From NCBI RefSeq assembly GCF_001194135.2, contig NC_068990.1, positions 43,774,697 to 43,838,696 on the forward strand: a stretch of 64,000 nt of DNA, in the 5' to 3' direction. Both the position numbers and the translations under genes were made by a program. Origin of the DNA: Octopus bimaculoides (taxonomy: Eukaryota). The notes under the pieces were generated by a model. It was not told the DNA's origin. It saw nothing but the letters and a program-made list of their open reading frames with translations, and did not search any database. Of this stretch, positions 1,786 through 59,673 are shown one piece after another; the first letter of the stretch is position 1; the number at the start of each line of letters is the position of its first letter.

Positions 1786-2302
1786 GTAAAGAATACGTAC
1801 ACCACCCGTTTTCGGCGTAACAAAAACCCAAACCCTAATACTAAACCCCAACTCTAACCTTAAACCTTAACCCGAACCCATAGGTGCAGGAGTGGCTGTT
1901 TGGTAAGTAGCTTGCTGACCAACCACATGGTTCCGGGTTCAGTCCCACTGCGTGGCACTTTGGGCAAGTGTCTTCTACTATAGCCTCGGGCCGACCAAAG
2001 CCTTGTGAGTGGATTTGGTAGACGGAAACTGAAAGACGTCCATCGTATATATGTATATACATCGTATATATGTGTAAGTGTATGTGTGCTTGTGTGTCTG
2101 TGTTTGTCCCCCAACCATCGCTTGGCAACCGATGCTGGTGTGTTTACGTCGGCAAAGAGAGACCGATAGAATAAGTACTAGGCTTACAAAAGAATAAGTT
2201 CTGGATTTGCTCGGCTAAAGGCGGTGCTCCAGCATGGCCGCAGTCAAATGACTGAAACACGTAAAAGAGTAACCCTAAACACCGGGTGTACGTATTCTTT
2301 AC
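1786..2302. mobile_element. Small TIR element with degenerate telomere-like (CCCTAA) repeats, interrupted by a SINE
   Basis: Perfect 18-bp TIR GTAAAGAATACGTACACC (1786-1803) / GGTGTACGTATTCTTTAC (2285-2302). Internal aaaccctaa/taaccc repeats lie on both sides of the SINE. Confidence 0.6.
1882..2272 (+). mobile_element. tRNA-derived SINE, family B, near full length
   Basis: A-box-like TGGCTGTTTGGT, B-box-like GGTTCAGTCC, internal (TA)/(TG) tract, tail ...gcatggccgcagtcaaatgactgaaac. More than ten related copies in the window. Confidence 0.85.
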
Positions 2303-3470: not shown

Positions 3471-5296
3471 GGTGAACATTTAAATATATGTGAATGTGTG
3501 GTGTATTGTTTTATTCGAAACAGAAGCGCCATTCCATCGTCGCTCGATAAAAAAAAAAAAACTAAAAAACTCTGCTACATGTTTCCTGTGCTCGTTTGTA
3601 CATTCAAACTTGCTTTTCTTTATTGCTTTTGTTCTGTCTCTCAGGTCGGCTTTTTCTTCTATCTTTTCATTCTGTCGGCAACACCTGTAACGATACTGGG
3701 ACATAGCTGTATCAGCCCTTGGCCAACATCGGTAGCATGGAGACAGGAAGACTTGTATGTATGTATGTATGTATGTATGTATGTTCATTCGGATACCAAT
3801 ATTGAAGGATCGCTAATAATAATAGTAATAAATAAAATCTTTTTAATGCTGAAATAGTTTTATAACCGGATGCCCTTTTATGTCACAAACCCTTACTTGT
3901 TTATCGAGTACAGAGTATCTTAGTCCACACATTTTACGAAGGTGCAAAACCAACAGACAACTCATTGATTGGGAATATTGGCAGCTGAGTTGTCTTTAAA
4001 CAAATGTAAACAATCTCACACGTGCTTTTTTTTTCAGTTTCCAGCTTGGGGATATAGTAAGAAAAACTTGCCTCAGATGCCATGCAATGGGACTGAATTG
4101 GAAACCATGTGATTGGGAAGCAGACTTCTAAAAATTACACAGTCATGCCCTGCACCCATTATATAATATGGTAGCAGAACTAAAATATAGAAAGGGTGAA
4201 GTTCTCTCTCTTTCTCTCCCCTTCATCCCCTTTTCCAAGTGAGGTAGCTATGTATCTATTGTAAGATAGCTGTCTCAATACTACCCCCTCCCCAGTCGAA
4301 GGGTCTTCTCTTTAAAGTTACTTAGTGACCTCACTGCTTTAAAGTATTTGGCGTTAGGAAGGGCATCCAGCTATCATAACCATGCCAAAGTAGACAGTAA
4401 AACTTGGTGCTGTCCTTTGGTTCACCAGTTCCTATCGAACTATCCAGCCCTTGCCAGCATAGAGAATGGATCTTAAATGATGATGTGGTGGTAATTGTCT
4501 ACGTCATGGGTATTTTATTATTTCAGTTTCATGGGGTATAAGACACAAATCAAAATTATAATGAAAAAGAAAAGGCCAACTGTTTGTTTTGGGTTAATTC
4601 CTATTATAATAGTTATGAAATGAAAAATGAAATCTTGTGACGAATGAAATTAAACTGAATGAAAGTAGATACAGAAATTGATACTTATGCAAGGGAAACT
4701 ACATGTACTGAATATCCTCAAATGAAGAAATACATTTCATTTATAATGGAAAGGTTTGTGATGTATCTTTCTCAATGAGTTAATGCAAATACAAAAAGAA
4801 TAAGCTATTTTATCTCTAGCCCTTAAAAGCTCCTCACCTTCCCAAACATTTTTACATTTCTACAACCCAGTAAGTTCCTGATGACCTTAAGAGAAAGGCA
4901 ATCAACACTACAGCTATTTTCTCTGTTTATATCACAGAGATTTTTTTTACTAATGTCCATTCAGTAGTGGGACTCCAGTAGTTTGATATTGTGATTTTCT
5001 TTTGAGTAGCCCTAGGTGAATGACACAATAAGATTCAAAAATAGCTTGGATGGAAACAAAGCAACAACATTATTTACATAATATATGGCTGAGGAGAAAA
5101 CTCCCCAGGAGAGTTTTTGGCATTCTAAATACTAATACAATAGAATGTCGCACAGTTAATACACCAAACTACCCATTGTCTTCTGTGGTCTAGTGGTATC
5201 TGCACTTGTTATATGAGAAATTTATACTCAGTTCTCAATTCTAGTCTTTGGATATTTGAGTTTTGTGTTTGTTGTTTTGGAGAAATTATTCTTTTA

Positions 5297-5890
5297 TTTG
5301 TTTCAGTCATTTGACTGCGGCCATGCTGGAACATCACCTTTAACGATTTTAGTCGAACAAATTGACTCCAGGACTTATTCTTTGTAAGCCTAGTACTTAT
5401 TCTATTGGTCTCTTTTGCAGAAGTACTAAGTTACCAGCACATAAACGCTCCAGCAAGTGATGGCAGGGACACACACATACACACAAATATATACATATAC
5501 ATATATATACAATGAGTTTCTTTCAGTTTCTTATCTCTTTACTGCCCACAAGGGGCTACACACAGAGGGGACAAACAAGGACAGACAAATGAATTAAGTC
5601 GATTATATCAACCTCCCCAGTGCATAACTGATACTTATTTAATTGACCCCGAAAGGATGAAAGGCAAAGTTGACCTCAGCGGAATTTGAACTCAGAATTT
5701 AAAAACAGAAGAAATACCGCTAAGCATTTCGCCTGGCATGCTATCGTTTCTGCCAGCTCGGCTTCTTTCAGTTTCTGTCTACCAAATCCACTCACAAGGC
5801 TATAGTAGAAGATACTTGGCCAGGATGCTATGCAGTGGGACTGAACCTGGAACCTTGTGGTTGGGAAGCAAGCTTCTTACTACACAGCCA
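5297..5890 (-). mobile_element. SINE family B interrupted by a family-C-headed SINE
   Basis: Reverse complement of the 1882-2272 element, split at its tttcagtttc motif. Confidence 0.8.
5532..5762 (-). mobile_element. tRNA-derived SINE with family C head and variant tail, nested in SINE B
   Basis: 14-bp TSD TTCTTTCAGTTTCT at 5518-5531 and 5763-5776. B-box GAGTTCAAAT on the - strand. Confidence 0.85.
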
Positions 5891-6384: not shown

Positions 6385-7665
6385 TCCTCATCATTGTTTA
6401 ATGTCCATTTTCCATGCTGGCATGGGTTGGACGGTTTGACTGGGGACTGTCAAGCCAGGAGGCCGCACCAGGCTCCAATCTGATCTGGCAGTGTTTCTAC
6501 AGCTGGATGCCCTTCCTAATGCCAACCACTGCGAGAGTGTAGTGGGTGCTTTTTACATGCCACCAGCATGGGAGCCAGTCGGCGGCATTGGCATTGACCA
6601 CATTTGGATGGTGCTTTTTATGTGTCACCGGCACGGGGAGCCAGTCAGTCGGCACTGGCAATGACCCAGTCAGTTGGCACAACTACAATTCCATTTGATT
6701 TTGATTTTACTTGACTCAATAGGTCTCCTCAAGCATGGAATGTCGCCTAATAATTCAAACGTACTTTTTAAAATCAAAGGTACTGGTGTAGGCAACGGCT
6801 GTGATCTCACTTTATTTGCCAGGTCTTCTCAATCACAGCATATCTCCAGAGGCCTTGGTCTTTCGTCATTGCCTCTGTGAGGCCCAACATTTGAAGGTCG
6901 TGCTTCACCACCTCATCCCATGTCTTCCTGGGTCTCCCTCTACCACGGGTTCCTTCCACTGTTAGGGATTGACACTTCTTCACACAGCTCTCCTCATCCA
7001 TACGCAGCACATGACCATACCAGCATAGTTGTCTCTCTTGCACACCACATTTAATGCTTCTTATGTCCAACTTTTCTCTCAGGATCATACTAGCTTCATT
7101 TTTTTTTCAAGCCGACGTATGTCTTCAGCAGTCATGACCCATGTTTCACTGCCATGTAGCATGGCAGTTTGCACACATGCATCATACAATCTACCTTTCA
7201 CTCTGAGCAAGAAGCCCTTTGTCACCAGTAGAGGTGGGAATTTTCTGAACTTTGCCCAGGCTATTCTTATTCTAGTGGCAACACTCTCCGAGCATCCAAC
7301 CCCACTACAGACTTGGTCACCTAGGTAACGGAAGCTATCAACTATTTCTAGTTTCTTCCCCTGGCATGTGATGGAATCAGTTTTCTGAGCATCTGTGGTG
7401 TTTATTGCCCCTGTGCATCTGCCGCACACAAAAGCTATCTTCCCAGTTAACCTTACTTTGATGTTGCTGCACCTCTTATGCATCTATAGCTTAAACTGGG
7501 TACATCGTATGGAGTTTCTACCTACACCTTTTCTACAGATCAAGCAAGGCTACCTACCTGAAGGGGTTTGTGATGTGTTCGCCTTTCTACTTACTAGGAC
7601 TTCGGTTTTTGCAACATTGACTCTAAGGCCCTTTGGTTCTAAACCTTGCTTCCACACCTGAAATT
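6385..7665 (-). mobile_element. 5'-truncated RTE-clade LINE (RT C-terminal region, 3' UTR, (ATG)n tail); pseudogenised
   Basis: ORF fragments ...LEIVDSFRYLGDQV...RIAWAKFR...GRLYDACVQTAMLHGSETW and ...RQLCWYGHVLRMDEESCVKK...GRGRPRKTWDEVV; frameshifts present. Confidence 0.92.
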
Positions 7666-8217: not shown

Positions 8218-8530
8218 AGAAGTGTGTTGGTTTTCAATCATTAAATTGTGGCCATGCTGGGGCACCACCTTGAAGAATTGTTTAGTCAAATGAATCGACC
8301 CCAGTACTTAGTTTTTTTTTATGTTTGGTACTTATTCTATTGGCCTCTTTTTGCCAAACTGCTAAGTTACAGGGACATAAGCAAACACCAGTTGTCAAGT
8401 GGTGGTAGATACACACACACACAACAGGCGTCTTTCAGTTTCTGTTTACCAAATCCACTCACAAGGCTTTGGTCAGCCCAAGGTGTCACGCTGTGGAACT
8501 GAACCAGGAACCCTGTAATTGGGAAGCAAA
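8218..8530 (-). mobile_element. SINE family B, degenerate
   Basis: Same tail and body motifs in reverse complement. Confidence 0.7.
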
Positions 8531-9180
8531 CTTAAGTTTGGCATACAGTATGGATGATATCTATAGATGGTGGTTGTGCAGAAGTGATAGTATTGATGCA
8601 TGTATGTATAGCCTAGATGTGTGGATCCTGTTGTTACTATAATTGTTGTTGGTGGTGATGACGTGTGCATGCTGTTTAATTGGAGGTGTTGTAGTTATAT
8701 GTTTATCGGTGAGTGTTGTGTGTATGTGTGTGTTTGTGATATGCTCTATTACCTTATAGGTGAGCTGTACTTTAAATGTGATCTATATTTACTACATAAA
8801 GGAGTGATTAACATTATTAATGTAATCCTTCTCTCATCTATTCATCTCTTACATCTATATATATAATGAAGAAGCTTTTAAGTGTTTCATGGTGTTTGAT
8901 CTATTAGAAATAGATGTCAAATCGCCCTCAAATAACAATTCAGACTAAATGAAAAATAAAGAGTAAAATAAAAGAAATGGTCATTGCTGGAATGCTGATT
9001 TGGAACTACATTGTAACAACAACATAGTCTCACTGTGTCTCTTTAATCTCTTTAATTCACATTTTCTCTTTGAATTTTGTACCTTCTGTCTCCCTTTCTT
9101 ACACATAAACTGTTATTCAGAACACACATGCATGCACGTGTGCGTGCGTGCATGCGTGTCTGTATGTGTGTGTGTATATG

Positions 9181-9967: not shown

Positions 9968-10700
9968 AGCTATCTTCCCAGTTAACCTTCCTTTGATGTT
10001 GCTGTACCTCTTATGTGTCCATAGCTTACACTGGGTGCATCTTTTTGGAATTTCTACCTACACCTTTTCTACAGATTGATCAGGGTCATCTACCTGAAAG
10101 GGTTTGTGATATGTTCGCCTTCCTACTTACTAGGACTTTGGCTTTTGCAACATTAATTCTAAGGCCCTTTGATTCTAAACCTTGCTTCCATACCTGAAAT
10201 TTCTTCTCTAGTTCTGGTAGTGATTCCGCTTTGAGAGCAAGGTCATCAGCATAGAGGCGCTTCCAGGGGCAACCTGTCTTGAATTCCTGTTATTGCCTGG
10301 AAGACCATGATGAATATGAGGGAGCTGAGGGCTGATCCTTAGTGAATCCCTACTTCTACCAGGAATTCTTCACTATACTCATTGCCAACCTTTACCTTAC
10401 TAACAGCATCCCTATACAGGGCCTCTACAGCTCTTATTAACCACTTGTCAATCCCCACGTCAGTTTTTGCATTGCCCACCAGATAAGGGATCAGGGGACC
10501 CTGTCAAAGCTTTCTCCATGTCAACAAAAGCCAAGTATAGGGGTTTCTCTTTGGCCAGGTATTTCTCCTGTAATTTCCGTACCAGGAATATAGCATCAGT
10601 GGTGCTTCTACCTGGCACAAAACCAAACTGCATCTCATCTAAGTAGACTCTCTTCCTAATTAGTTGGGCTATAACCCTCTCCATGACGTTCATCACTATA
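9968..10700 (-). mobile_element. RTE LINE internal RT-core fragment
   Basis: LDEMQFGFVPGRSTTDAIFLVRKLQEKYLAKEKPLYLAFVDMEKA and an LYADDL motif at ~10240-10258; frameshifted. Confidence 0.9.
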
Positions 10701-11909
10701 TATAGTACACTGATTAATGCTATTATATACACTTATTATTAAGTTTGCAGTGCTGTTGATTTTTGCTGTTGGATGTTTGGATCAACTTCTGTCACATTGC
10801 TAGCTGTGAGGAAGGATTCTCTTCATGAAGCTTCCCTTAGTAAAAGTATTTTGGTGGAATAAAATATGAATAAGAAGTGCCAACCAATTATGTATTATAT
10901 TCAATACTTGCCTACACATTTTTTGCAAGTGGAAGTTACATAATACATAAGATTTGAAATCTGTTTCTATGCAAGTTCTTTCTGAAGTACTTACTTAAAA
11001 ACTAAGAAAATTCAAGTTCTCCTATAAGTAAATATATGTGTATACATATGCATATAAGTCTTTATAGGTATCTAATTATATAACTATACATAGGCGCAAA
11101 AGTGGCTGTGTAGTAAGTAGCTTGCTTACCAACCACATGGTTCCAGTTGTGCACATTAATGATCTTGTTTTAACAATTTATTACATCATTAAGGAAGAAA
11201 ATCCTTTCAGATTTATCCACTGACTCTTTGTGTTGCTGTTAGTGTTGTTTAGTCTCAGATCAGTTCGGGTTGAGCAGCCACAGCATTCAAAGTTATTTTC
11301 ACCATGACGATCTGTCTTTTAAGGTATAGTTTATCACAAACACATCAGCCAAAATTTTCCTTCCTTATTCTTAAAAATGCTATGATTTGAAGATTTGGCT
11401 GTTAGTTTTTATCTACTTGAGTCACTATGGAGAAAGTTCCTTCATATGCTTGTGATTCTTTATACTCTTTCTTTCATAGTAAATGTTTCATTTTATTCTT
11501 GAGACTTTCTTTTATCAGCTTTAACAGATTCTGCCAGAAAGTCATTCATTTTTATATTGTCTTGAGACATCCACTGCTATAGTTTTATTAATCACTTCCT
11601 TTATTATGTTGACTGTACTGTTTAATACCTGCTACTTCCTGTGATCATTATATCCTACTACTTATTTTATAATTTTGAAAAATCTCAAGGTTCTTCTTAA
11701 TTTTCTTATCTTTGGTGTCTTGAAGTCAATTCTTATAACCTACTCCTCATAAATCAATTTGCTTAAGGATGATATTATCTTGATGGCTTAACAGTCATTG
11801 CACTTTTTCAGTCATGTTGATATCTCTTCATTTGAAATTCTTTTGATTAAGTTGCCAATATATTTACACTAGTTTATATTGCACATTTGACCAACATTCA
11901 ATCTTTTAA

Positions 11910-12120
11910 CCCTTTAGTATTTGAACTGGCCATATCAGACCAAAATATTCTACCTGCTTTATGTTCAAACTGGCCAGATCCAACCTCTCGCACCTACCTT
12001 ACAATGTCATTCTAAGAATAAGCAACAACACCATTAAAATGTAAAGGCTACAAGACAGATAATGCAGAATTAATTGAAAATACGAATTACATTTAACAGA
12101 ATAATTTGAATGCTAAAGGG
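11910..12120. mobile_element. piggyBac-type MITE (~211 bp)
   Basis: TTAA|CCCTTTAG...CTAAAGGG|TTCA, i.e. CCC/GGG ends with a TTAA site (one side mutated). Related copies at ~55612-55820 and ~56015-56184. Confidence 0.7.
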
Positions 12121-12205
12121 TTCAATGAGTTATACAAAATTTTGTCATGTCACACTAACATTGAATTATTGTCTTCATTACACTCAAGTATCTCTTGAAT
12201 ATAAT

Positions 12206-12563
12206 TTTATTTCTCAAACGCGTGATAATGCTATAAATAGTGTGATCAGGATAAATTATCCATATATTGCAGAAAAATATGTTACTAGCCAGCCATGAGA
12301 CTTGAACTCACATCTCTGTGATTACGTGTCAAGTGTTTTACCATTAAACTAAACTGCCCAGCAATGAATTCTTCTGCAATTTTAGAACTTACAAATTTAG
12401 CTTCATAAGATGCTAACGTTAAATTCAACTTTACGATGAAAGTAAACAAACAGAGATGTGAGTTCGAGTCTCATGACTGGCCAGTAACGTATTTTTCTGC
12501 AATATATGGATAATTTATCCTGATCACGCTATTTATAGCATCATCACGCGTTTGAGAAATAAA
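12206..12563. repeat. Inverted repeat, 114-bp arms (12206-12319 / 12450-12563), 6 mismatches
   Basis: Direct base-by-base comparison; all six differences are transitions. Confidence 0.95.
12287..12358 (-). pseudogene. tRNA-like pseudogene or SINE head (Thr-CGT-like anticodon loop), not a functional tRNA
   Basis: - strand GGCAGTT TA GTTT AATGGT AAAAC A CTTGA CACGTAA TCACA GAGAT GTGAG TTCAAGT CTCAT GGCTGGC T. T-arm is intact. Acceptor and anticodon stems are mismatched and U33 is lost. Confidence 0.55.
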
Positions 12564-12707
12564 TTTATTTCTGTATCTTACAATACATCTCAACGCTTCT
12601 AAAAACAAACTTTGTTTACTTTCATCGTAATCTTGAATATAAATTTTAATGTTTCTAAATTAGCATAGAATGCATATATTGATATTATTAAAAGGTCTTG
12701 GAGAAAA

Positions 12708-13689: not shown

Positions 13690-14115
13690 TTCATTGAATC
13701 GAATTTGATGACAGCACCGCATGACTGGCATTCATGCTAGTGGAGTGCTAAGAGCACCATCTGAGCGTGATCGTGGCTAAGGCCGCTGCATGGCTCCCAT
13801 GCCGGTGGCACGTAAAAAATACCATTCGAGCATGATCGTTACCAGTGTCGCCTTACTGGCACTTGTGCCAGTGGTACGTGGAAAACACCATTTGAGTGTG
13901 GCCATTGCTAGTACCTCCTGACTAGCCCTCATGCCGGTGGCACGTAAAAGTATCCACTACATTCTCGGAGTGGTTGACATTAGGAAGGCCATCCAGCTGT
14001 AGAAACTCTGCCAGATCAGACTGGAGCCTGGTGTAGCTATTTGGTTCACTAATCCCCAGTCAAACCGTCCAGCCCATGTCAGCATGGAAAGCGGACGTTA
14101 AATGATGATGATGAT
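13690..14115 (+). mobile_element. RTE LINE 3' UTR with internal tandem units and (ATG)n tail
   Basis: Repeated ggtggcacgtaaaa units followed by the standard terminus ...catggaaagcggacgttaaatgatgatg. Confidence 0.85.
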
Positions 14116-14221
14116 GATATATATATACATATATATATATAATGCAAGAGAGTTAGGGGTTGAAGATTCAACCCACTAAGGGATAGTATGTATCCAATAT
14201 ACTGCTGGGAGGGTACCCAAT

Positions 14222-15118: not shown

Positions 15119-15300
15119 CATCCACTACACTCTTGGAGTGGTTGGCGTTAGGTAGGGCATCCAGCTGTAGAAACTCTGCCAGATGAAATTGGAGCCTGGT
15201 GCAACCATCTGGTTCGCCAGTCCTCAGTCAAATCGTCCAACCCATGCCAGCATGGAAAGCGGGTGTTAAACGACGACGACGATGATGATGATGATGATGA
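15119..15300 (+). mobile_element. RTE 3' terminus with (GAC/GAT)n tail
   Basis: Same terminus as the other RTE copies. Confidence 0.8.
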
Positions 15301-17751: not shown

Positions 17752-18095
17752 CAGGTGTGGCTGTGTGGTAAGAAGCTTGCTTCCCAGCCACATGGTTCCG
17801 GATCCAGTCCCAATGTGTGGCACCTTGGGCAAGTGTCTTCTACTATAGCCTTGTGAGTGGATTTGGTAGACGGAAACTGAAAGAAGCCTGTCGTATATAC
17901 ATGTGTGTGCATATGTATATATGCACACTTGACAACCGATGATGGTGTGTTTACGTCCCTATAACTTAGCAGTTCAGCAAAAGAGACCGGCAGAATAAGT
18001 ACTAGGCATATAAAAAAATAAGTCCTGAGGTTGATTTCTTTGACTAAAACCCTTTAAGGCAGTGTTCCATCAGCTGATGACTGAAACATGTAAAA
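17752..18095 (+). mobile_element. SINE family B
   Basis: Head gcaggtgtggctgtgtggtaagaagc...ggttccggatccagtccc; tail gactgaaacatgtaaaag. Confidence 0.8.
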
Positions 18096-47145: not shown

Positions 47146-48659
47146 AGCTAGACTTTCCAGTCTTTCCAGCTCTTTGTTGACCTGGTCTATTGCTGCAAAT
47201 GGCATGTTTTGTTTAGGCCTAAAAACAAGTGTTGCATTTTCTTTTACAGCAATTCTCACTTTTGTTTTAGGGCAACAGCCCAATCCTTCCCAAAAAAACA
47301 TTTGGAAATAATTTTTTTAATTTTTTGTCTCAGTTCTTTGACTTCATTCAAGCCTTTGACCGTCCCAACTACATTTCCACAGAGGAAACTTTTGTGGGTA
47401 TCCCACATTTTAAATAATCCCATGCATTCTGTACCAAATAAGTTTAGTGATTTTTTTCAACACAAATATTTGCCCTTTTCATTTTATCTTGAAAAGTTAC
47501 ATTGCAAACGCATTCACCGATAAAATATAATTTCCTTCCAGTAACACCATATGCTACTTTATTTGATCTAAATAATTTCGGTTTATCGATTTTTTTCCAT
47601 GTTTGTTCATTTATGATAGTGATGTCACTCCCCATGTCTAATTGCATTTTGACACTTGTGGTTTCGACTTTTACCTTGATGAATTTTCTGTTCGCTGTAC
47701 TAACTTTTTTTCTGATGGTAAACAATTTCTTTTTTTCTTGTTTGTTCCAAATTTTCGTCGTCTTAGTTCTGCAGTGCGATTTAATATGTCCTGTATTCCC
47801 CCAACGAAAACACTTTGTTTTTTGAATGGACAGTCTTTCTTCAGGTGCATACCACCACATGCTATACATAGGTTTATATCTTGATGTTTATTGTGTTTTT
47901 TGTGAAACACTTTATCCATCTGCAGACTCTTCTGCACTGGTTTTACCTGGAAACAATCTCTGCATTGGATTTCCTCTGTGTCATGTCTTACTTTTCATAT
48001 CATATTGCATTCTTCTGACAGTTTCTGTAGGGTTATATCCTGGTTCATTTTCAGCTTTGCAAGGATTTTCATTCTGACTTCTGCATCCTTTTTAGGATGT
48101 TAGTTTATCCCGTTTAAACCTCTCGCATTCCCTGTTCTCACTATCCACATGTGTAGTAAAGTCTTCATCATTGCTTTTCTCAGTGTTCAAGCATTTCTAA
48201 CATGTGTTGAACAATGAGCTTTTTTCACTGAATATCTTACATAAAATGTCAATTGTGTGTCTGTAAAATTTGTCAGAAGATTTTTTTAGGCAGTATAAAG
48301 TTACTGTATTTTTCATGCTCTGTTGTTACTGGTTTCCTCAAAATTAGACATGTTTACATTTCATCTATCCGGTCTCAACATTCTTTTTTGAAAATTTGTT
48401 CAAATCTTCTGTAATATGCCTCAAAGGTGACTCCTTCTTCTGGGTCATATTTAAATTCATTTACTGAATTTGCTATACGGTCTGACAAAAGCATATTTTC
48501 AGGTTTTGTTACCAACTTCATTAGTTCTAGCATTTGTTGCTGTTCTTGTTGTTATTGTTGCTGTTTTTGCAACTCAACTCACCAACAAATTTTCCATGAT
48601 TTTACAGATTTTTCATAAAATGTGTGCAATAAAACATTTGTTACTCCACTGTTGAGTTA

Positions 48660-48865: not shown

Positions 48866-48918
<53 letters not shown>

Positions 48919-49078
48919 GACAGGCTTCTTTCAGTTTCTGCCTACCAAATCGATTCACAAGGCTTTGGTTGGCCCGAGGCTATAGTAGAAGACACTTGCC
49001 CAAGGTGCCATGCAGTGGGACTGAACCTGGAACTTGGGTTGGTAAGCAAGCTACTTACCACACAACCACTCCTACGCC
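48660..49078 (-). mobile_element. SINE family B, full length, inserted in the Gypsy 1 leader
   Basis: Reverse complement of the family B consensus, with an (AC)n core. Confidence 0.85.
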
Positions 49079-49632: not shown

Positions 49633-52599
49633 TGTTATATATCCTGGAGTTGGATAAATAGTTTAACGAAGCAGTGGAAAAGAAAGTATTCACATGACAC
49701 ACTATAATTATTGTTACACGAAGTTAAATGCTCTCTGCCAACTACTCAGAGCGAACTGCTTACAATGAACTGCTGATAATTCTTTATTTTATTGTAATAT
49801 GTCAGTCCACTTTTAGTCACGTGAGGGTAGCTACAATCTTTCCACAACATCTCCCCTTTTTAGAATAAGTTTCCTCAGCTTCTCCTCTTTTGAGAATTAA
49901 ACTCCATCCAGAGTTTTAATATCTTTTACGCTTAGAGTTCAATTCCAGTGTTTCTGTTCTTTTCTGTTTTCTGCTGTTATTGTTTGGGTGTTAGTACCTC
50001 AAATGTGTCGTACAATACTTCCATGGGGATTTCATTTCTTGTGACTGTTTTTTCCATGAATCTTTTTTTAATTTGATTAATATGTCTTTTATGTTTGACA
50101 TTTTTTTTTCTTTTACCAGGAATAACATTTTTCTAATTTGTTTAATAATTACACTGTCTTCCCAGCTTGCTTTACCGTATCTATAGGTTTAAAAAAAAAA
50201 ACTCTGTTACCTAACTTGAAGAATTCTGAAGATTTTTGTTGTTCCCCTTTTTTCTATTTTCACTCGGTATCAGCTTATCAAAGACAGATCTGACCTTTCT
50301 AGCAAACATCAGTTTTGCAGGTGACATTCCAGATGAGGTATTCAGATTGTTACTTGGTACACTCTGAGAAATTGTTGAAGTGCAAGGTTGTCCATTACTT
50401 CATTGTTCGCCTTTTTAAACACCCTCTTGAAAGCGTCAGCAAAACGCTTCACTTGTCCATTTGACTTAGGGTGATACAGTGGAATGGTGACATTCGATAA
50501 TGAACATCTTACAAAATTTTCTGAACTCATCTGAAGTAAATTGAGTTCCATTATCAGACACAATGGTGTCATATCTGGTGAACAATTCATGTAAAAAACA
50601 TACTGTAACCACAGATGTCAGCTTTTTACACTTGTGCACTTCAGGCCACTTTGAAAAACTGTCCATCACAACAAGGTAATATGAACCTTTAAGTGGACCA
50701 GCATAATGAACATGCAGTCTGGAACATGGAATATATATTTTTGGCCATGGTTGCTATTTAGTGGTAGGTGCTTTTGCAGCTAGGCCACACCCTCTGCATG
50801 CTTTCATTAGTTCTTCAGTGTCATGGTCCATTGTTGGCCAATATACATAACTTTTCTAATCTCTCTAACTCTAAGTTTATCAGTTCTAATGCTGTGAAAG
50901 GTACAGTCCGTTTTAGTTTAAATACCCATATGGTGTTTTCTTTTACTTCAATCTTTGCCTTTGTTTTGGTGCACAGACCTAATTAAATTGACAGAACTTC
51001 AGGAAAAAGCTTTTTTAAATTTTAAAAATTTGTCTGATAACTTACTTGTACTGGTAGAAAAACCATTCAAATATTTACAAAAAAGATTTATGGGGAGGTC
51101 CCATAAGTTAAATAATTCCATCCAGTTTGTTCCGAATAAATTTGTCATATTATTCAACACAAAATCTTAGACTTTTAAGGTTTTTCCATGAAATGTAATG
51201 TCTCTTATCATTTTGCCCTTAAAATGTAATTTTTTCCTAAAACACCACCTGCAATTTTTGAAGTTTCTTTTAACCTAGGTCTCCTGATTTTTTCCCCATA
51301 TTATCTGTATTAATTATTGAGATATCACTGCCTGTATCCAATTGTAACTTTTGATACACAAATTCTCTTTGAGGTTCGTTCATATTTCTTGTCACTGATA
51401 ACCTGTTTACATGATTTTTTTCTATTGAACTGTTTTTTAAGTCTTGTTTTACAGTATGATTTTTTATGACCTATCTTACCGCACTTGAAGCATTTTATAT
51501 TTTTAAACAGACAGTTACTTTTAAAATGTAGACCACTGCACCATAACATGGATTTGGTCTTGACATTTTTTCTCTTTTTTCTTATCCCTTACTGGTCAAC
51601 ACACCTGATTATGAGAGAAATTTTTTTCTTCAATTTTATGTGCATCATGTCTTAGATTTATAATTCTCTGGCATTCTGCTAATACCTGTAGAGTTAATGT
51701 TTGATCCTGTTATAATTTTGTTAATATCTAGGAATGTATATCTGCATCTTTGTTTGCAGTTAGCCCTTGAACAAAAATTAGATGCTTGAACATGTCTGGG
51801 GTTAATTCATTTAATTTTTCACACTCTCTGTTAACAACCTCAGCATGGGTGACGAAATCTTCATCTTTTTTGACTAAATTTAAACATTGCCAGCAAGTAT
51901 TGAATAGGGAGCTTCTTTCAGTGAAAATTTTCGATAAAAAATTGTTTCATCAAAACAGATTTCACCTGGTTTCTTCAGCAGAATATAGTTACTATGTTTT
52001 TCATGTTCAGCAGAGGATAACTTTCTTAAAAGTAGTCATACTTTTTTCTTGTCAGACCAATTTTTACATTCTTCTTTGAAAATTTCTTTGCATCTTCAAA
52101 AATATGCAGAGAAGGTAATACCTTCTGGAATATAACCGAATTCTTCAATTGAGTTTGCTATGCTATCTGGCAAGTATGAACCTGAAGTATTTTCAGACTT
52201 CTTCAACATTAATTCCAGTAACTGTTGGTTTTGTTGTTGCCGTTGCAACTTTACCTTGAAGGCCAATAAGTCCTCCACGTTAAACAATTTTTTGGGGGTT
52301 TTGAACCCCCCCCCCCCCCCCCAAANNNNNNNNNNNAAAAAATTTTCAAACATTCAACACAAGCTTCAAACAACTCATCACCACTTTTATATCCTGGAGT
52401 TGGATAAATAATTTAACAAAGCAGGGGGAAAGAAAATATTCACATGATGCTCTACGATTACTGTTACACGAGGTTAAATGCTCTCTGCCAACGGCTCACA
52501 GCGAACTGCTTACACTGAACTGCTGATAATTCTTTATTTTATAGCAATGTGTCAGTCCACTTTTAGTCAGATGGAGGTGGCTAGAATCCTTCCACAACA
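49633..52599 (-). mobile_element. Ty3/Gypsy LTR retrotransposon 2 (decayed gag, knuckles, integrase; large pol deletions)
   Basis: LTRs at 49633-49849 and 52385-52599. PPT AAAAAGGGGAGA; PBS-like GTGGTGATGAG. Integrase DSFSKWPEV...IVSDNGTQFTSDEFRKFC...YHPKSNGQVKRF; knuckles HFKSNC / CFKCGKIGHKKSYC. TSD unclear (gatt/aatt). Confidence 0.9.
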
Positions 52600-53649: not shown

Positions 53650-54791
53650 CACTCTTAACATAGGCCAGGCTTTCCTACCCACTCCACTGCATGTGGATAT
53701 TTCGGACTGAGCCAGTGTTAATTCCCTCTGTAGCAAAATGAGCCCTTCTACTTAGTGTTATGGAAACACAGTTTTCCCCAGCCATCTTGGGCGATAACTT
53801 AAGTAATATCTCTATATTTGATCAAACAAACTGAAAGCATGTAATTTTTCTCACATAAACAAATCTGACATTGAATCAAAGACCTAAAGTGAACTGTGGA
53901 GCAAAATATACAGAGCAAAGAGATATTATGGGTATATTAACTATGTCTACTATTTATTATTAATGGCTGTTTATTTGTTATAAACTATTTTGTAAAATTG
54001 CCAGTTATCAATATCATGTAAAATAGATTTCAAGAAGCGCTTTTTCATCTCTTCTATTTTTCCTGGCAGTGCATACCAAGCTATCGTTAGTTCTAGCATG
54101 ATAAATTCCTCTTGTAGCTAAACTTTTGCTTACTTACGTAATTAGTCAGCTTCTTTCCAAGCAGCTTCAGATTACTACTGTAAGCTCTTTCCTCCTATGT
54201 GTATAATGGAGACAACTTCCATGTCCAGTAGCCTTCGAATGCCATTATGAATTCCAATGGTAGCTATAACTTAACCTCTTTCCTTCCTACATCATAAAGG
54301 GACATGGCCTCTCAGCTATAATAAAGTGACCCATCTAAGAAGTTGGGCACTCTGAACAAACCTAGCAGAAAAGGATTCTACTCTAATTGTATAAAGGATA
54401 AGTAGATCTCTCCCTGTGTAAACTGTAGCAAAGGCAACCTTTTTAGGAGAGCATTAACTCTGAATAAAAACTGATACTCAGTAATGAGAATTCTTTAGTC
54501 ATATAGATAATCTTTCAAGCATCATACTGTAAAGTGCTTGGTGATAGGAAGGGCATTCATCTATAAAAACCATTAAGTCATCAATTATGTTTGGCTCTGG
54601 TTTCAGTAATTTTAATTTTGAAATTATTGTTTAAAGTAATGTTTATTGCAACATCAGTATGACTGTTCAATGTTACTACTGTTTTTAACCCCAGGAAGAG
54701 CCTCCTCCAGCTGGTTATTGATGAAATCTGCAGCCTGTATATATTGCAAGCAGAGGAGTGAACCCCTACCAACTTCTAGCAGATGACAGGA

Positions 54792-54840
54792 TCACCAGAC
54801 TGAACGGTTTCGGGCTATTTGTGCCTGTCATCAGTGGTAA
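54792..54840 (-). ncRNA. Type I hammerhead-ribozyme-like motif, copy 1
   Basis: - strand: TTACCA CTGATGA C AGGC ACAAATA GCCC GAAAC CGTTCA GTC TGGTGA. It has a 6-bp stem I (one G-U), the core CUGAUGA, stem II (one A-C mismatch), GAAA, a 2-bp stem III and a GUC cleavage triplet. Confidence 0.7.
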
Positions 54841-55124
54841 ACACCCAGCTGCTAGAGATGACAAGAATTTGTTCCAGCTTGCAATATATAGAAAACTAGT
54901 GACAACCAAGCAAAGTAGCTAGTCAGAAAATCTCTATAAAAGAGGAAAGTAGTAACTACACTGAGAAGTAATGTTTATCGCCACATCAATATGACTGTTT
55001 GATGTTATTACAGTTATTAACCTTAGGAAGAGCCTCCTCCAAGCTGGTTATCAATGCAGTTTACACTCGGTACCTATTGCCAGCAGAGGAGCGAACCCCT
55101 ACCATCTTCTAGCAGACAAAGGGA

Positions 55125-55173
55125 TCATCAGAGCAGGCAGTTTTGGGCTATTTGTGCCCATCATCAGTGGTGA
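55125..55173 (-). ncRNA. Type I hammerhead-ribozyme-like motif, copy 2 (decayed)
   Basis: - strand: TCACCA CTGATGA T GGGC ACAAATA GCCC AAAAC TGCCTG CTC TGATGA. Stem II is perfect, but G12>A, G16.2>C and one stem I mismatch are present. Confidence 0.6.
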
Positions 55174-56542
55174 ACACTGAACTACATTGTTATTGGCAGA
55201 AAAATGCATGACAGTGAGGACTTACCCAAGCTAATGGGGGACAGAGATTCTTGATGTGGTGCTGTGAAATGCATTTCAGTTGTGACTGCTTAAAGAACAT
55301 ATAAAACAAACAAAAGAGAAAGGAATGAAGAATGAAAAAAGTATACAGAACATTGGAAATAAATTAAATGCCAACATAAAGTTGATAAGATTATTATCAG
55401 GAGCTTAAGTTGTGTACAATTAGTATCAGATCAAAGAAGATTCTTTAGTTATATGTTTCTCTGATAATAGTTTATTAGTAACTTTGCATCCTTCTCCCTA
55501 AATACTTCTCTCATGCTATTTATAAGTCAGATAATTATGCCAATTGTAATGTTTTCTTAAATTTTGGCTTATAAAGTGAACAAATTCATTACTTTTTCAA
55601 GTCTAGTTTCTTAAGCTTTTAGCATTTATACTTGTCACATCCAGCTCAAATATTCTAGCTGTTTTATGTTCCAACTGGCCACACCTACTCTACAATGTTA
55701 TTCTGAATATAAACAATTACTTCTTTGAAATCTTGAAGATATGAAAAAATGCATGGTTAATTCAAAACAATATGAATAGATAATGATTAAATTTGACAGA
55801 ATACTCCGAATGCTAAATGGCTACCTCGCTGCTAATCTATCTTTAAACCTGTTGGTTAGACTGTGCATAAGTGAGCTAAAGAGGTAACTGTCTAAGAAAG
55901 GTATTAGCTACTTCCTTTCTCTGTGTAAGAGATGGCTGTTGATAGGGACATGTAATATGTAACACTTTTGCATTCAGATTACTCTGTCTAATGTATGCTT
56001 ATTTATTCATATCAATTTGAATTACTTATGCATTATCCTGTAGCTCTGAGATGTCAACAATGTGATTGTTTATTTTAGAGTGATATTGTTGAGTTGGTGT
56101 GCGGAGCTGGGGCTGGTTGGTTTGATCATAAAGCAGGTAGAATATTTGGGCCAGCTATGGCTGGTTTGAATGCTAAAGGGATAAATTATGCATGTCATGT
56201 GGTTAAGAAGTTTGTTTTATAACCAGCTGGTTCCATGTTTGATCTTACAGTGTGACATGTTGGGCAAGTCTCTTTGCTGTATTTTAGCTTGACTAATTCC
56301 TTGTGATTGAAATTTGATAGACAAATGTGCTGAAGCCCATTGTAATATTATACATAATGTAATTGATGACTGGTAAAAAAGTTGCAGAATGTTTTAGTCT
56401 CATGATCTTGTCAAACTAATGTGCATTAGGAATAAATTAATGTGTATATAGTAATGAAGCCCACCTCTGGAAATTATGAAAAAAAGCACATATGGAGGGT
56501 GTAGGGTGAAACCTTGAATGAGGGTTTTTGATAAAATTTGAA

Positions 56543-58429: not shown

Positions 58430-59027
58430 GTCTGGAAGTTGTACTCCATTGCTGTCTACTTTTTACCCTGTCCTCAGTTCAATAACAGTGCATTTATCTA
58501 GACCAAATGCCAACTAGATGTTATGTGAGAAAATTCGAACAACCTGAATCAGGAACTAACCTTTGTTAGTTCCATAAAGCTCCAAATTATCCATAAACAG
58601 TGGGTGGTTAATTGGTCTCATGTTCTTCTGTAGTTTGTAACCAGTTCCCATCTTCTTCAAAACCATGGCGAGTCGTAACATACTAACAATAAACAGCAGG
58701 GGTGGCACAGTCTCCTTGAAAGATACCCCACTCTTGATGTTGACATAACCAGTTTCGTCTCCACTTGCTGATAGAATAGTCTTCCATTTCCTCTTACTAT
58801 TTTCGAATAAATATATATTTTTAGATTCATCAACCATCTCCAGGCATTTTAGATTCCACACGCAAGGAACCATTTCATATGCCTTCCTATAGTCCATCCA
58901 AGCCATTGATAACCTTGTCAACCTTCTTTGACGGTTCCTCAAAATTACCTTATCAATCAGCAACTGATCCTATGTTCCTCATGATCCCTTCTTGCAGCCT
59001 TTTTGTTCATTTAGCTAGCAGTTCATT
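58430..59027 (-). mobile_element. R4/Dong-type non-LTR retrotransposon RT fragment, pseudogenised
   Basis: EQKGCKKGS*GT*DQLLIDKVILRN...LSMAWMDYRKAYEMVP...INHPLFMDNLELYG...QVVRIFSHNI*LAFGLDKC; the motif style fits R4-clade RTs. Confidence 0.8.
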
Positions 59028-59094: not shown

Positions 59095-59673
59095 CAAGCA
59101 AGTCATCCTTCACCTTATTTCTGACCACCAGCCAAGTATACGTGTGGAGACAGCCAAAAGAAGCATTTGACCCAGATTGCCCTCTTCCAACTGTTAAACA
59201 TGGAGGAGGATCTGTGATGATCTGGGGGAGGCTATATCTTGGAAATCTGCCGGCCCAATGGTTTCCCTTCATGGCAGAATTAATAGTCAAGACTATTTAA
59301 GCATTTTTTCTGATCAAATTCAACCTATGGTTGCGGAACTGTTTCCGGAGGGAAACGCAATCTTTCAGGATGATAACAGACCAATTCACACTGCTAAAGT
59401 TGTTACTGAATGGCACAAGGAATATTCTAGTGAAGTTGAACATCTTATCTGGCCACCACAGTCCCCAGATCTCAGTATTATTGAACATTTATGGTACATT
59501 TTAGAAAAACAAGGAGTCGTTATCCTCCACCATCATCACTACAAGAACTGGAGACTGTTTTAGCTGAAAAATGGACAAAAATTCCTTTGGAAACAATTCA
59601 AACTTTGTATGAGTCCATACCGTGTAGAATTCAAGCTGTAATTACCGCCAAAGGCAGCCCTTCCCCATATTAA
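59095..59673 (+). mobile_element. Tc1-like transposase catalytic-domain fragment with 36 residues between second D and E
   Basis: VYVWRQPKEAF...TVKHGGGSVMIWG; FQDDNRPIHTAKVV...WPPQSPDLSIIEHLW; ESIPCRIQAVITAKGSPSPY*. Two frameshifts; no TIR seen. Confidence 0.88.

What the first reader, a model, noticed from the sequence alone, without database searches (positions are those of the whole stretch)
54634..55177. 333-nt hammerhead-delimited repeat: candidate retrozyme / self-cleaving circular-RNA unit
Seen: two ~210-bp direct repeats, each carrying on the - strand a motif that folds as a type I hammerhead. The inferred ancestral motif is TCACCA-CTGATGA-Y-GGGC-ACAAATA-GCCC-GAAAC-N6-GTC^TGGTGA. That gives a 6-bp stem I, an intact CUGAUGA/GAAA core, a 4-bp stem II, a 2-bp stem III and a GUC site. 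The predicted cuts (54798/54797 and 55131/55130) are exactly 333 nt apart, and no ORF or RT flanks them. The two copies carry different lesions, so their consensus is a perfect fold. Established: metazoan non-LTR retrozymes and Penelope-like elements carry minimal type I hammerheads in tandem, and some release small circular RNAs. Inference: this is a decayed copy of a non-autonomous ribozyme retroelement family whose younger copies could yield a ~333-nt circRNA. I do not know whether such a family has been described in this lineage. The one extra nucleotide after A9 departs from the canonical core.
Basis: partly seen in the sequence, partly recalled or inferred. Interest (0 to 1): 0.85.

Follow-up and report, generated by a model that had tools for sequence, protein, structure and literature searches.

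The report
Decayed hammerhead-ribozyme retroelement in octopus DNA
This is a dead, mutated 1.66-unit copy of a small non-coding mobile element that once carried a self-cutting hammerhead RNA motif of the Penelope-like-element/retrozyme kind; the kind is well known in animals, and this looks like an ordinary relic of it in an octopus-like genome.

Summary
Two 211-220-nt direct repeats (A1 54632-54852, A2 54966-55185) flank a single 113-nt spacer B. Each repeat starts, on the minus strand, with a type I hammerhead-like motif, and the predicted cut sites are exactly 333 nt apart. Copy 1 is the only hit in the window to a relaxed hammerhead descriptor, where about 0.003 hits are expected by chance. 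Copy 2 is dead (G12A, G16.2C, a helix I mismatch).

The window is strongly CpG-depleted, and CpG decay lets six of the eleven differences between the two motifs be polarised without using the ribozyme model. All six resolve to hammerhead-compatible states (G10.1, G12) and lengthen helix III to 3-4 bp. The "extra nucleotide after A9" is a published hallmark of Penelope-like-element hammerheads, not an anomaly.

Against it:
- Rfam hammerhead models detect neither copy.
- No second copy of the family was found anywhere I could search.
- No Penelope RT/endonuclease lies in the 64 kb.
- The TSD candidate and the rod-like fold are not significant.

Verdict: a real, roughly 19%-diverged relic of a hammerhead-bearing non-autonomous Penelope-related element (non-LTR retrozyme or miniature pLTR-internal-pLTR) in an octopod genome. 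It is a known kind in a lineage where I found no published record. Interest is low.

The parts
54966..55185 (-). Repeat A2, the upstream copy on the minus strand (220 nt), starting with the dead hammerhead copy
   Evidence: nhmmer profile hit 55185-54966, E 1.8e-78.
55125..55173 (-). Hammerhead relic, copy 2: UCACCA-CUGAUGA-U-GGGC-ACAAAUA-GCCC-AAAA-C-UGCCUG-C-U-C^UGAUGA. Lesions are G12A, G16.2C and a C.A mismatch in helix I. Former cut site 55131/55130.
   Evidence: for coordinates and sequence; it fails the descriptor.
54853..54965 (-). Spacer B (113 nt), present once and completing the 333-nt period. In the predicted fold its 3' part pairs with the segment just after the upstream cut site.
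   Evidence: no significant similarity to A; fold.
54632..54852 (-). Repeat A1, the downstream copy on the minus strand (221 nt), starting with the better-preserved hammerhead copy
   Evidence: nhmmer hit 54852-54634, E 9.5e-78.
54792..54840 (-). Hammerhead relic, copy 1: intact CUGAUGA, GAAA and GUC, 6-pair helix I, helix II with an A.C mismatch at 10.1-11.1 (CpG->CpA decay), extra C after A9. Predicted cut 54798/54797.
   Evidence: only descriptor hit in the window; coordinates. CpG polarisation.
54798..55130 (-). The 333-nt unit between the two predicted cleavage sites, 41% GC, the putative monomer/circRNA equivalent
   Evidence: circular fold -87.7 kcal/mol, z = -1.8, not significant.
55186..55191 (-). 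Candidate 6-bp target-site duplication AACAAT, 5' copy; the 3' copy is at 54626-54631. Chance-level match.
   Evidence: only 6-mers are shared between the flanks, and about one such match is expected by chance in 70-nt AT-rich flanks.

Best explanation
The locus is a dead, roughly 1.66-unit insertion (A-B-A, minus strand, 55185->54632) of a small non-coding retroelement. Its 333-nt repeat unit carried one type I hammerhead ribozyme of the Penelope-like-element (PLE)/metazoan retrozyme kind.

How the living family would work is inferred from the published families, not shown here. A multimeric transcript is cut by the hammerhead after GUC in each unit, possibly with two hammerheads acting as a dimer through the palindromic helix III. 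This releases 333-nt monomers with 5'-OH and 2',3'-cyclic phosphate ends. A host tRNA ligase (RtcB) circularises them. A PLE reverse transcriptase/GIY-YIG endonuclease supplied in trans copies the circular or multimeric RNA for more than one turn and inserts it, giving A-B-A.

After insertion the two A copies decayed neutrally, largely through CpG deamination, to 19% divergence. That destroyed copy 2 (G12A and others) and weakened copy 1 (G10.1A). The host is an octopod cephalopod.
For: Shown here:
- Repeats and 333-nt spacing.
- Copy 1 is the sole hit to a relaxed hammerhead descriptor, with 0.0033 expected per window.
- The window has CpG o/e 0.29. The two copies show five CA/TG paired differences against 0.46 expected (P = 5e-5), plus single CG-vs-CA/TG sites.
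- Polarising by CpG decay alone restores C+G10.1 (intact 4-bp helix II with G10.1-C11.1) and G12 (intact GAAA). It also turns loop 3 into ACCGYYCGGU, a 3-4-bp near-palindromic helix III.
- Three further differences are structure-neutral. In the last two, copy 1 keeps the pairing state.
- B occurs once, so a simple tandem DNA duplication cannot give this layout.
- No conserved ORF and no Pfam or PLE protein signal at the locus.
- RT-fragment relatives are Octopus bimaculoides proteins.

From the literature:
- Metazoan type I hammerheads have helix I of 6 bp, helix II of 4 bp and a short palindromic helix III.
- Non-LTR retrozymes are 170-400-nt, <50% GC units without LTR, PBS or PPT. They occur in mussels and many other invertebrates (PMC7229834) and derive from PLE pLTRs (bioRxiv 10.64898/2026.07.22.740005).
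- Octopus genomes carry many Penelope-like elements (PMC13282606 and PMC8967140).
Against: - No Rfam hammerhead family matches either copy, even at E<=10 on 86-nt slices.
- Neither extant copy is canonical. The perfect motif exists only as a reconstruction from two sequences.
- No other family member was found: window blastn and nhmmer, viral and metagenome pattern scans, a six-frame protein search, and a full-text search for the sequence. None of these collections holds an octopus genome, so this is absence of test rather than a negative result.
- No PLE RT/EN in the 64 kb.
- The TSD is at chance level.
- MFE and circular-fold z-scores are weak, -1.5 to -1.8.
- The hammerhead region is no better conserved than the rest of A: 11 of 49 positions differ.
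Confidence: 0.6

Rival explanations
1. The locus is the remnant of an autonomous Penelope-like element insertion, not a dedicated non-autonomous retrozyme. Two head-to-tail, severely 5'-truncated PLE copies share the same terminus: a 220-nt copy followed by a 333-nt copy. This is the classic PLE partial tandem that creates pseudo-LTRs. On this reading 333 nt is only the length of the second truncated copy, not a unit that circularises.
For: PLEs insert as tandem or partial-tandem, often 5'-truncated copies with the hammerhead inside the pLTR, and most genomic PLE hammerheads are isolated truncated remnants (PMC4209133; PMC8557442; PMC11167929). The extra nucleotide after A9 is a PLE hallmark. 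Penelope-like elements expanded in octopus at a Jukes-Cantor distance of about 0.2 (PMC13282606), which is compatible with the age of this relic. The A-B-A layout fits this reading equally well.
Against: B and A carry no detectable PLE coding remnant, and tblastn with a Poseidon-clade PLE protein finds nothing anywhere in the window. A stop codon 21 codons after the AUG within the CUGAUGA core is shared by both copies. Helix I of 6 bp, helix II of 4 bp and a real helix III resemble the canonical retrozyme hammerheads more than the PLE min-HHRs, which have a long helix II and no helix III. Retrozymes are themselves reported to be pLTR derivatives, so the two readings overlap.
Confidence: 0.25
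2. Chance resemblance: a local, non-retroelement duplication of ordinary AT-rich DNA that happens to contain CUGAUGA...GAAA...GUC with flanking complementarity.
For: Rfam hammerhead models are silent. There is only one locus and no family evidence. The descriptor's chance rate of 0.0033 per 62 kb extrapolates to about 150 hits in a 2.7-Gb genome. The first-stage scan presumably looked at many windows. MFE z-scores are unremarkable.
Against: The hit lies inside one of very few local direct repeats in the window, and at the homologous position of both copies. CpG-based polarisation, which does not use the ribozyme model, repairs the core and two helices. Features not demanded by the descriptor match published PLE/retrozyme hammerheads: the nucleotide after A9, G10.1-C11.1, a near-palindromic helix III, 6-bp and 4-bp helices, a 333-nt period and 41% GC. 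A-B-A with B present once is not a simple tandem duplication.
Confidence: 0.08
3. An LTR-type retrozyme or TRIM-like element, with A as 211-220-bp LTRs each carrying a hammerhead and B as the internal region, as in plant retrozymes.
For: The A-B-A architecture with one hammerhead per terminal repeat mimics plant LTR retrozymes (PMC4918200 title and abstract; PMC7229834).
Against: Read directly:
- A does not begin with TG and end with CA.
- B starts CTCAGTGTAG, with no TGG-type primer-binding site.
- The last 17 nt of B are only 41% purine, so there is no polypurine tract.
- The hammerhead is type I, whereas plant LTR retrozymes carry type III.
- There is no 4-bp TSD.
Confidence: 0.03

Closest known systems
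Metazoan non-LTR retrozymes (Cervera & de la Pena 2020, PMC7229834), e.g. Mytilus galloprovincialis 350-390-nt and axolotl 331/353-nt units
   Same: One type I hammerhead per 170-400-nt non-coding unit. GC below 50%. No LTR, PBS or PPT. More-than-unit genomic copies. The host lineage also carries PLEs. A mollusc precedent exists in the mussel.
   Different: Only 1.66 units are present and both ribozymes are mutated. No array, family, expression or circRNA has been shown. It has the extra nucleotide after A9 that is more typical of PLE hammerheads. It is not recognised by Rfam hammerhead models. I found no published cephalopod example.
Hammerheads in the pseudo-LTRs of Penelope-like elements (Cervera & de la Pena 2014, PMC4209133; Poseidon_Ac, PMC11167929)
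   Same: [quoted passage not shown]
   Different: PLE min-HHRs usually have a longer helix II (6-8 bp), a shorter helix I (4-5 bp) and no helix III loop. Here helices I and II are the canonical 6 and 4 bp with a helix III hairpin. No RT/GIY-YIG ORF lies between or near the repeats.
Newt/salamander satellite 2 and Schistosoma SM-alpha hammerhead repeats
   Same: About 330-nt repeat units carrying one type I hammerhead with a weak helix III that cleaves best as a dimer.
   Different: Those are high-copy tandem arrays with proven transcription and cleavage. This is a single decayed 1.66-mer in a different phylum with no sequence similarity shown.

Membership tests
Hammerhead ribozyme, type I | Conserved core C3-U4-G5-A6-N7-G8-A9 ... 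G12-A13-A14 ... U16.1-H17 in the type I order (helix I open, helices II and III closed) | tested here: met
   Copy 1 has CUGAUGA, GAAA and GUC in the right order. Copy 2 has G12A. CpG polarisation gives ancestral G12.
Hammerhead ribozyme, type I | Three helices around the core: helix I about 6 bp, helix II about 4 bp with G10.1-C11.1, helix III with A15.1-U16.1 | tested here: met
   Copy 1 has helix I of 6 pairs (one G.U), helix II of 3 pairs plus an A.C mismatch, and helix III of 2 bp. The CpG-polarised ancestor has helix II of 4 bp with G10.1-C11.1 and helix III of 3-4 bp. This rests on only two sequences, so there is no covariation test.
Hammerhead ribozyme, type I | Recognition by the curated Rfam covariance models (Hammerhead_1, HH9, HH10 and others) | tested here: not met
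   No hammerhead family appears at gathering score or at E<=10, even on 86-nt slices. The reconstructed ancestor could not be submitted to that tool.
Hammerhead ribozyme, type I | Site-specific self-cleavage 3' of H17 | not testable with these tools
   Needs in vitro transcription of the monomer and dimer.
PLE-type hammerhead (Cervera & de la Pena 2014) | [quoted passage not shown] | tested here: met
   Extra C/U at 54827/55160. G10.1 is present in copy 2 and inferred ancestral. The ancestral helix III ACCG-YY-CGGU is near-palindromic. Criteria are quoted from PMC4209133.
PLE-type hammerhead (Cervera & de la Pena 2014) | Location in the pLTR of an element encoding RT plus GIY-YIG endonuclease | tested here: not met
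   tblastn with Poseidon_Ac_1p against the window gives only a noise hit at E 0.64. Pfam finds no GIY-YIG in the flanking ORFs that were scanned. Truncated or non-autonomous copies are expected to lack the ORF.
Metazoan non-LTR retrozyme | Short (about 170-400 bp) repeat unit with one type I hammerhead, occurring as tandem multimers in multiple genomic copies | tested here: inconclusive
   The 333-nt period and 1.66 units are present. TRF does not call an array. No other copy was found in the window or in the accessible collections, none of which holds an octopus genome.
Metazoan non-LTR retrozyme | No LTR termini, PBS, PPT or coding capacity; GC below 50% | tested here: met
   No TG...CA ends, no TGG primer-binding site, and the end of B is 41% purine. 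ORFs are at most 65 aa and not conserved between copies. GC is 41%.
Metazoan non-LTR retrozyme | Target-site duplication longer than 4 bp, when present | tested here: inconclusive
   Only a 6-bp AACAAT match between the flanks, at chance level.
Metazoan non-LTR retrozyme | Expression as linear and circular RNAs with a highly self-paired fold | tested here: inconclusive
   Expression is not testable here. The circular MFE is -87.7 kcal/mol with 64% of bases paired and z = -1.8, and 7% of shuffles fold as well.
Metazoan non-LTR retrozyme | Co-occurrence with autonomous PLEs in the same genome | not testable with these tools
   Literature only: Penelope-like elements are abundant in Octopus vulgaris and O. 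bimaculoides. None lies in this window.
Plant-type LTR retrozyme | Type III hammerheads in LTRs, PBS, PPT and a 4-bp TSD | tested here: not met
   The hammerhead is type I, and there is no PBS, PPT or TSD.

The most novel reading that the evidence does not exclude
Octopod genomes harbour a still-undescribed, possibly active family of about 333-nt hammerhead retrozymes mobilised by their abundant Penelope-like elements. Its younger copies would yield abundant, highly base-paired circRNAs in a lineage known for massive A-to-I RNA editing, where such dsRNA-like circles could be prominent ADAR substrates.
Probability: 0.15. Interest if true: 0.45.

Novelty: new member of a known kind. Interest (0 to 1): 0.22.

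Why it matters
If the family is confirmed genome-wide, it would extend hammerhead retrozymes and PLE-derived ribozyme elements to cephalopods. It would also give a handle (the 333-nt unit and its cut site) for looking for ribozyme-made circRNAs in octopus transcriptomes. As it stands, the locus is one neutral, decayed relic with no plausible present function. Methodologically, it shows that CpG-decay polarisation of two old paralogous copies can recover an ancestral ribozyme without assuming the ribozyme model.

Tried and rejected
Searches for further copies of the family, all negative:
- blastn and an nhmmer profile against the window.
- A 504-aa concatenate of all six-frame ORFs of the element against the 5.8-billion protein index, hoping for spurious gene calls on octopus-derived contigs: 8000 candidates, none at E<=1.
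- Full-text search for the motif sequence.
- Supplement searches of two papers.
- Exact look-ups of two window ORFs and of an O. bimaculoides UniRef protein, to reach the source genome: none on record. The one look-up that succeeded reached only a 1.6-kb ENA contig.

Other negative tests:
- Rfam at gathering score and at E<=10 on 1.2 kb and on 86-nt slices gave no hammerhead.
- MFE folding of the single motifs was uninformative, as expected for hammerheads.
- TRF made no call.

Ideas considered and dropped:
- B as a degenerate copy of A: local alignment was not significant, P = 0.03 and 0.89.
- AATAAA 11 nt before the element's 3' end as a poly(A) signal: copy 2 has GCGATAAA, so the AATAAA in copy 1 is itself a CpG->CpA product.
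- The RT-like fragment 3.4 kb upstream on the same strand as the element's own RT: Pfam does not recognise it, its motifs look LINE-like to me (my reading, not a tool result), and tblastn with a PLE protein does not hit it.
- An A-to-I editing footprint in the differences between copies: the substitution spectrum is symmetric and dominated by CpG decay.
Full report
WHAT IS THERE

On the minus strand the region reads A2 (55185->54966), B (54965->54853), A1 (54852->54632). The repeat finder gives two blocks with start-to-start spacing of 333 and 332 nt. MAFFT joins them into one homologous block with a single 1-nt indel. Over 212 columns I count 28 transitions, 11 transversions and 1 indel, or 18.9% divergence. 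B is present once and is not significantly similar to A. TRF does not call an array. Blastn and an nhmmer profile built from the two copies find no further copy in the 64 kb.

THE HAMMERHEAD MOTIF

- Copy 1 (54840->54792) is UUACCA-CUGAUGA-C-AGGC-ACAAAUA-GCCC-GAAA-C-CGUUCA-G-U-C^UGGUGA. All core boxes are intact. Helix I has six pairs, one of them G.U. Helix II has three pairs plus an A.C mismatch at 10.1-11.1.
- Copy 2 (55173->55125) has G12->A, G16.2->C and a C.A mismatch in helix I. It could not cleave.
- The predicted cuts at 54798/54797 and 55131/55130 are 333 nt apart.

I wrote an RNAmotif-like descriptor. It asks for a 6-bp helix I with at most one mismatch, CUGANGA, an optional extra nucleotide, a 4-bp helix II with at most one mismatch, GAAA, at least two pairs in helix III, and UH. 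Copy 1 is its only hit on either strand of the window. In 300 first-order Markov simulations of the window it hits 0.0033 times per window.

That rate would still give roughly 150 chance hits in a 2.7-Gb genome, so the descriptor alone is not decisive. The hit, however, lies at the homologous position of both copies of one of only about four non-simple local direct repeats in the window.

Against this, no Rfam hammerhead model reports either copy. That holds at gathering score, at E<=10 over 1.2 kb, and at E<=10 on 86-nt slices. MFE folding is uninformative, as is usual for hammerheads.

AN INDEPENDENT CHECK OF THE ANCESTRAL MOTIF

I looked for a polarisation that does not use the ribozyme model.

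The window is strongly CpG-depleted: CpG o/e is 0.29, GpC o/e 1.00 and TpG+CpA o/e 1.31. The two copies differ by five adjacent CA-versus-TG pairs, the signature of one ancestral CpG deaminated on opposite strands in the two copies. Permutation of the observed substitutions expects 0.46 such pairs (P = 5e-5). Several further sites have CG in one copy and CA or TG in the other.

Applying this rule to the 11 differences inside the 49-nt motif resolves six of them:
- The nucleotide after A9 was C and position 10.1 was G. This restores a 4-bp helix II with the G10.1-C11.1 pair.
- Position 12 was G, which restores GAAA.
- Loop 3 read CCG-YY-CGG, so helix III was A-C-C-(G)/(C)-G-G-U. That is 3 bp closed by a GYYC tetraloop, or a 4-bp near-palindrome.

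Three of the remaining differences do not affect pairing. In the last two (16.2 and one helix I position), copy 1 has the pairing state. Every site that can be polarised independently therefore moves towards a better hammerhead. For one version of the reconstruction the three-way junction is the MFE structure.

COMPARISON WITH THE LITERATURE

Cervera & de la Pena (PMC4209133) describe canonical metazoan type I hammerheads as having helix I of 6 bp, helix II of 4 bp and a short helix III with a palindromic loop. [quoted passage not shown] The reconstructed motif has all of these.

Other published points that bear on the locus:
- Non-LTR retrozymes are 170-400-nt, <50% GC, ORF-less units with one type I hammerhead. 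They lack LTR, PBS and PPT, and are found in corals, mussels, axolotl and "many other invertebrate genomes". [quoted passage not shown]
- A 2026 preprint concludes that they are non-autonomous derivatives of PLE pLTRs.
- In the anole Poseidon element the hammerhead straddles the pLTR-ORF junction, and reverse transcription starts internally. That explains the tandem and partial-tandem copies.

HOST AND CONTEXT

An RT fragment from the window finds Octopus bimaculoides proteins at 60-79% identity. The window is a 35% GC draft assembly with N gaps and microsatellites. It also holds:
- an RVT_1 reverse-transcriptase fragment (LINE-like by my reading), a Tc1/mariner DDE_3 fragment and an integrase core domain;
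- weak, below-cutoff protease (RVP) and zinc-knuckle matches;
- a SINE-like family of about 160 bp with at least nine copies.

Octopus genomes are reported to contain many Penelope-like elements, with an expansion at a Jukes-Cantor distance of about 0.2. The only paper in the library containing both "octopus" and "hammerhead ribozyme" that bears on the question is Craig et al. 2021. It mentions Octopus only for Naiad PLEs, which lack canonical hammerheads. I therefore found no published cephalopod retrozyme.

tblastn with the Poseidon_Ac protein, taken from the supplement of PMC11167929, finds no PLE coding remnant anywhere in the window. The unit has 41% GC. Its circular fold is -87.7 kcal/mol with 64% of bases paired, at z = -1.8, which is suggestive but not significant. 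The only flank match is a 6-bp AACAAT, at chance level.

INTERPRETATION

B is single, so a simple tandem DNA duplication cannot produce A-B-A. The layout is what a more-than-unit-length copy of a 333-nt periodic template gives, whether that template is a circular or multimeric RNA. Equivalently, it is a miniature pLTR-internal-pLTR element.

I therefore read the locus as a dead relic of a hammerhead-bearing, non-coding, PLE-dependent retroelement (confidence about 0.6).

- Main rival (about 0.25): two severely 5'-truncated copies of an autonomous PLE in partial tandem. In that case 333 nt is not a circularising unit. The two readings overlap, since retrozymes are thought to be pLTR derivatives.
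- Chance resemblance: about 0.08.
- Plant-type LTR retrozyme: about 0.03. This fails on the PBS, the PPT, the TSD and the ribozyme type.

All mechanistic steps (cleavage, circularisation, PLE-mediated reverse transcription) are inferred from the published families. None is shown for this sequence.

LIMITS

The decisive test is copy number, consensus and covariation in the source genome. It could not be run because no accessible collection holds an octopus genome. Every indirect route I tried was empty. With only two decayed copies there is no covariation evidence.

VERDICT

The specific "333-nt circRNA retrozyme family" is plausible but untested. The kind of element is already well known in animals, molluscs included. 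This is an ordinary, old, inactive copy in a lineage without a published record, so interest is low.

Noticed in passing
window 1896-2058, 4081-4129, 5760-5887, 8417-8531, 17761-17909, 27015-27081, 29773-29929, 35879-36035, 38583-38760, 48889-49064: An interspersed repeat family of about 160 bp, SINE-like, with at least nine copies at 80-93% identity on both strands. It produces recurring pseudo-ORFs such as 'LSVSVYQIHSQGFG...PEAIVEDTCP.CHAVGLNPEPCGW'. Pfam finds nothing in them.
   Followed up: partly
window 12287-12358 (-), 12200-12320 / 12450-12568: An Rfam tRNA hit (35.9 bits, above gathering score) that ARAGORN does not call. It lies beside a 119-nt inverted duplicate at 94% identity. It is probably a tRNA-derived SINE head or pseudogene rather than a tRNA gene.
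   Followed up: partly
window 55611-56184; relative at 11905-12025: Nested imperfect inverted repeats (arms 65 and 78 nt, 72-74% complementary) form a foldback of about 570 bp, 430 bp from the hammerhead element. Part of it recurs at 11905-12025 at 77-79% identity. It shows no similarity to the hammerhead unit and is probably a MITE/foldback or two inverted SINE copies.
   Followed up: partly
window 7085-7483 (-), 10463-10732 (-), 27960-29296 (-), 30225-31375 (+): Several fragments with reverse-transcriptase similarity that look like one family by their shared RT motifs. Two of them match Pfam RVT_1, and one fragment's closest named relatives are Octopus bimaculoides uncharacterised proteins at 60-79% identity. 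This is what identifies the host lineage.
   Followed up: partly
window 58556-58969 (-) and 59198-59560 (+): A degenerate RT-like reading frame that Pfam does not recognise, 3.4 kb upstream of the hammerhead element on the same strand. It is not PLE-like by tblastn. It abuts a Tc1/mariner DDE_3 transposase fragment.
   Followed up: yes
window 47444-47994 (-), 50345-50753 (-), 51328-51588 (-): LTR-retrotransposon-type remnants: an integrase core domain (rve, E 1e-10), plus weak, below-cutoff matches to a retroviral protease (RVP) and a zinc knuckle (zf-CCHC).
   Followed up: partly
whole window: Strong CpG depletion: CpG o/e 0.29, GpC o/e 1.00 and TpG+CpA o/e 1.31. This implies germline CpG methylation and deamination across this repeat-rich region, and it proved useful for polarising old paralogous repeats.
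   Followed up: yes
window 13952-14118 / 15120-15286 and 27481-27553 / 27596-27668: Two other local direct repeats (167 nt at 84% identity and 73 nt at 74% identity). The first pair flanks a TA/TG microsatellite and an assembly gap. I did not analyse them further.
   Followed up: no
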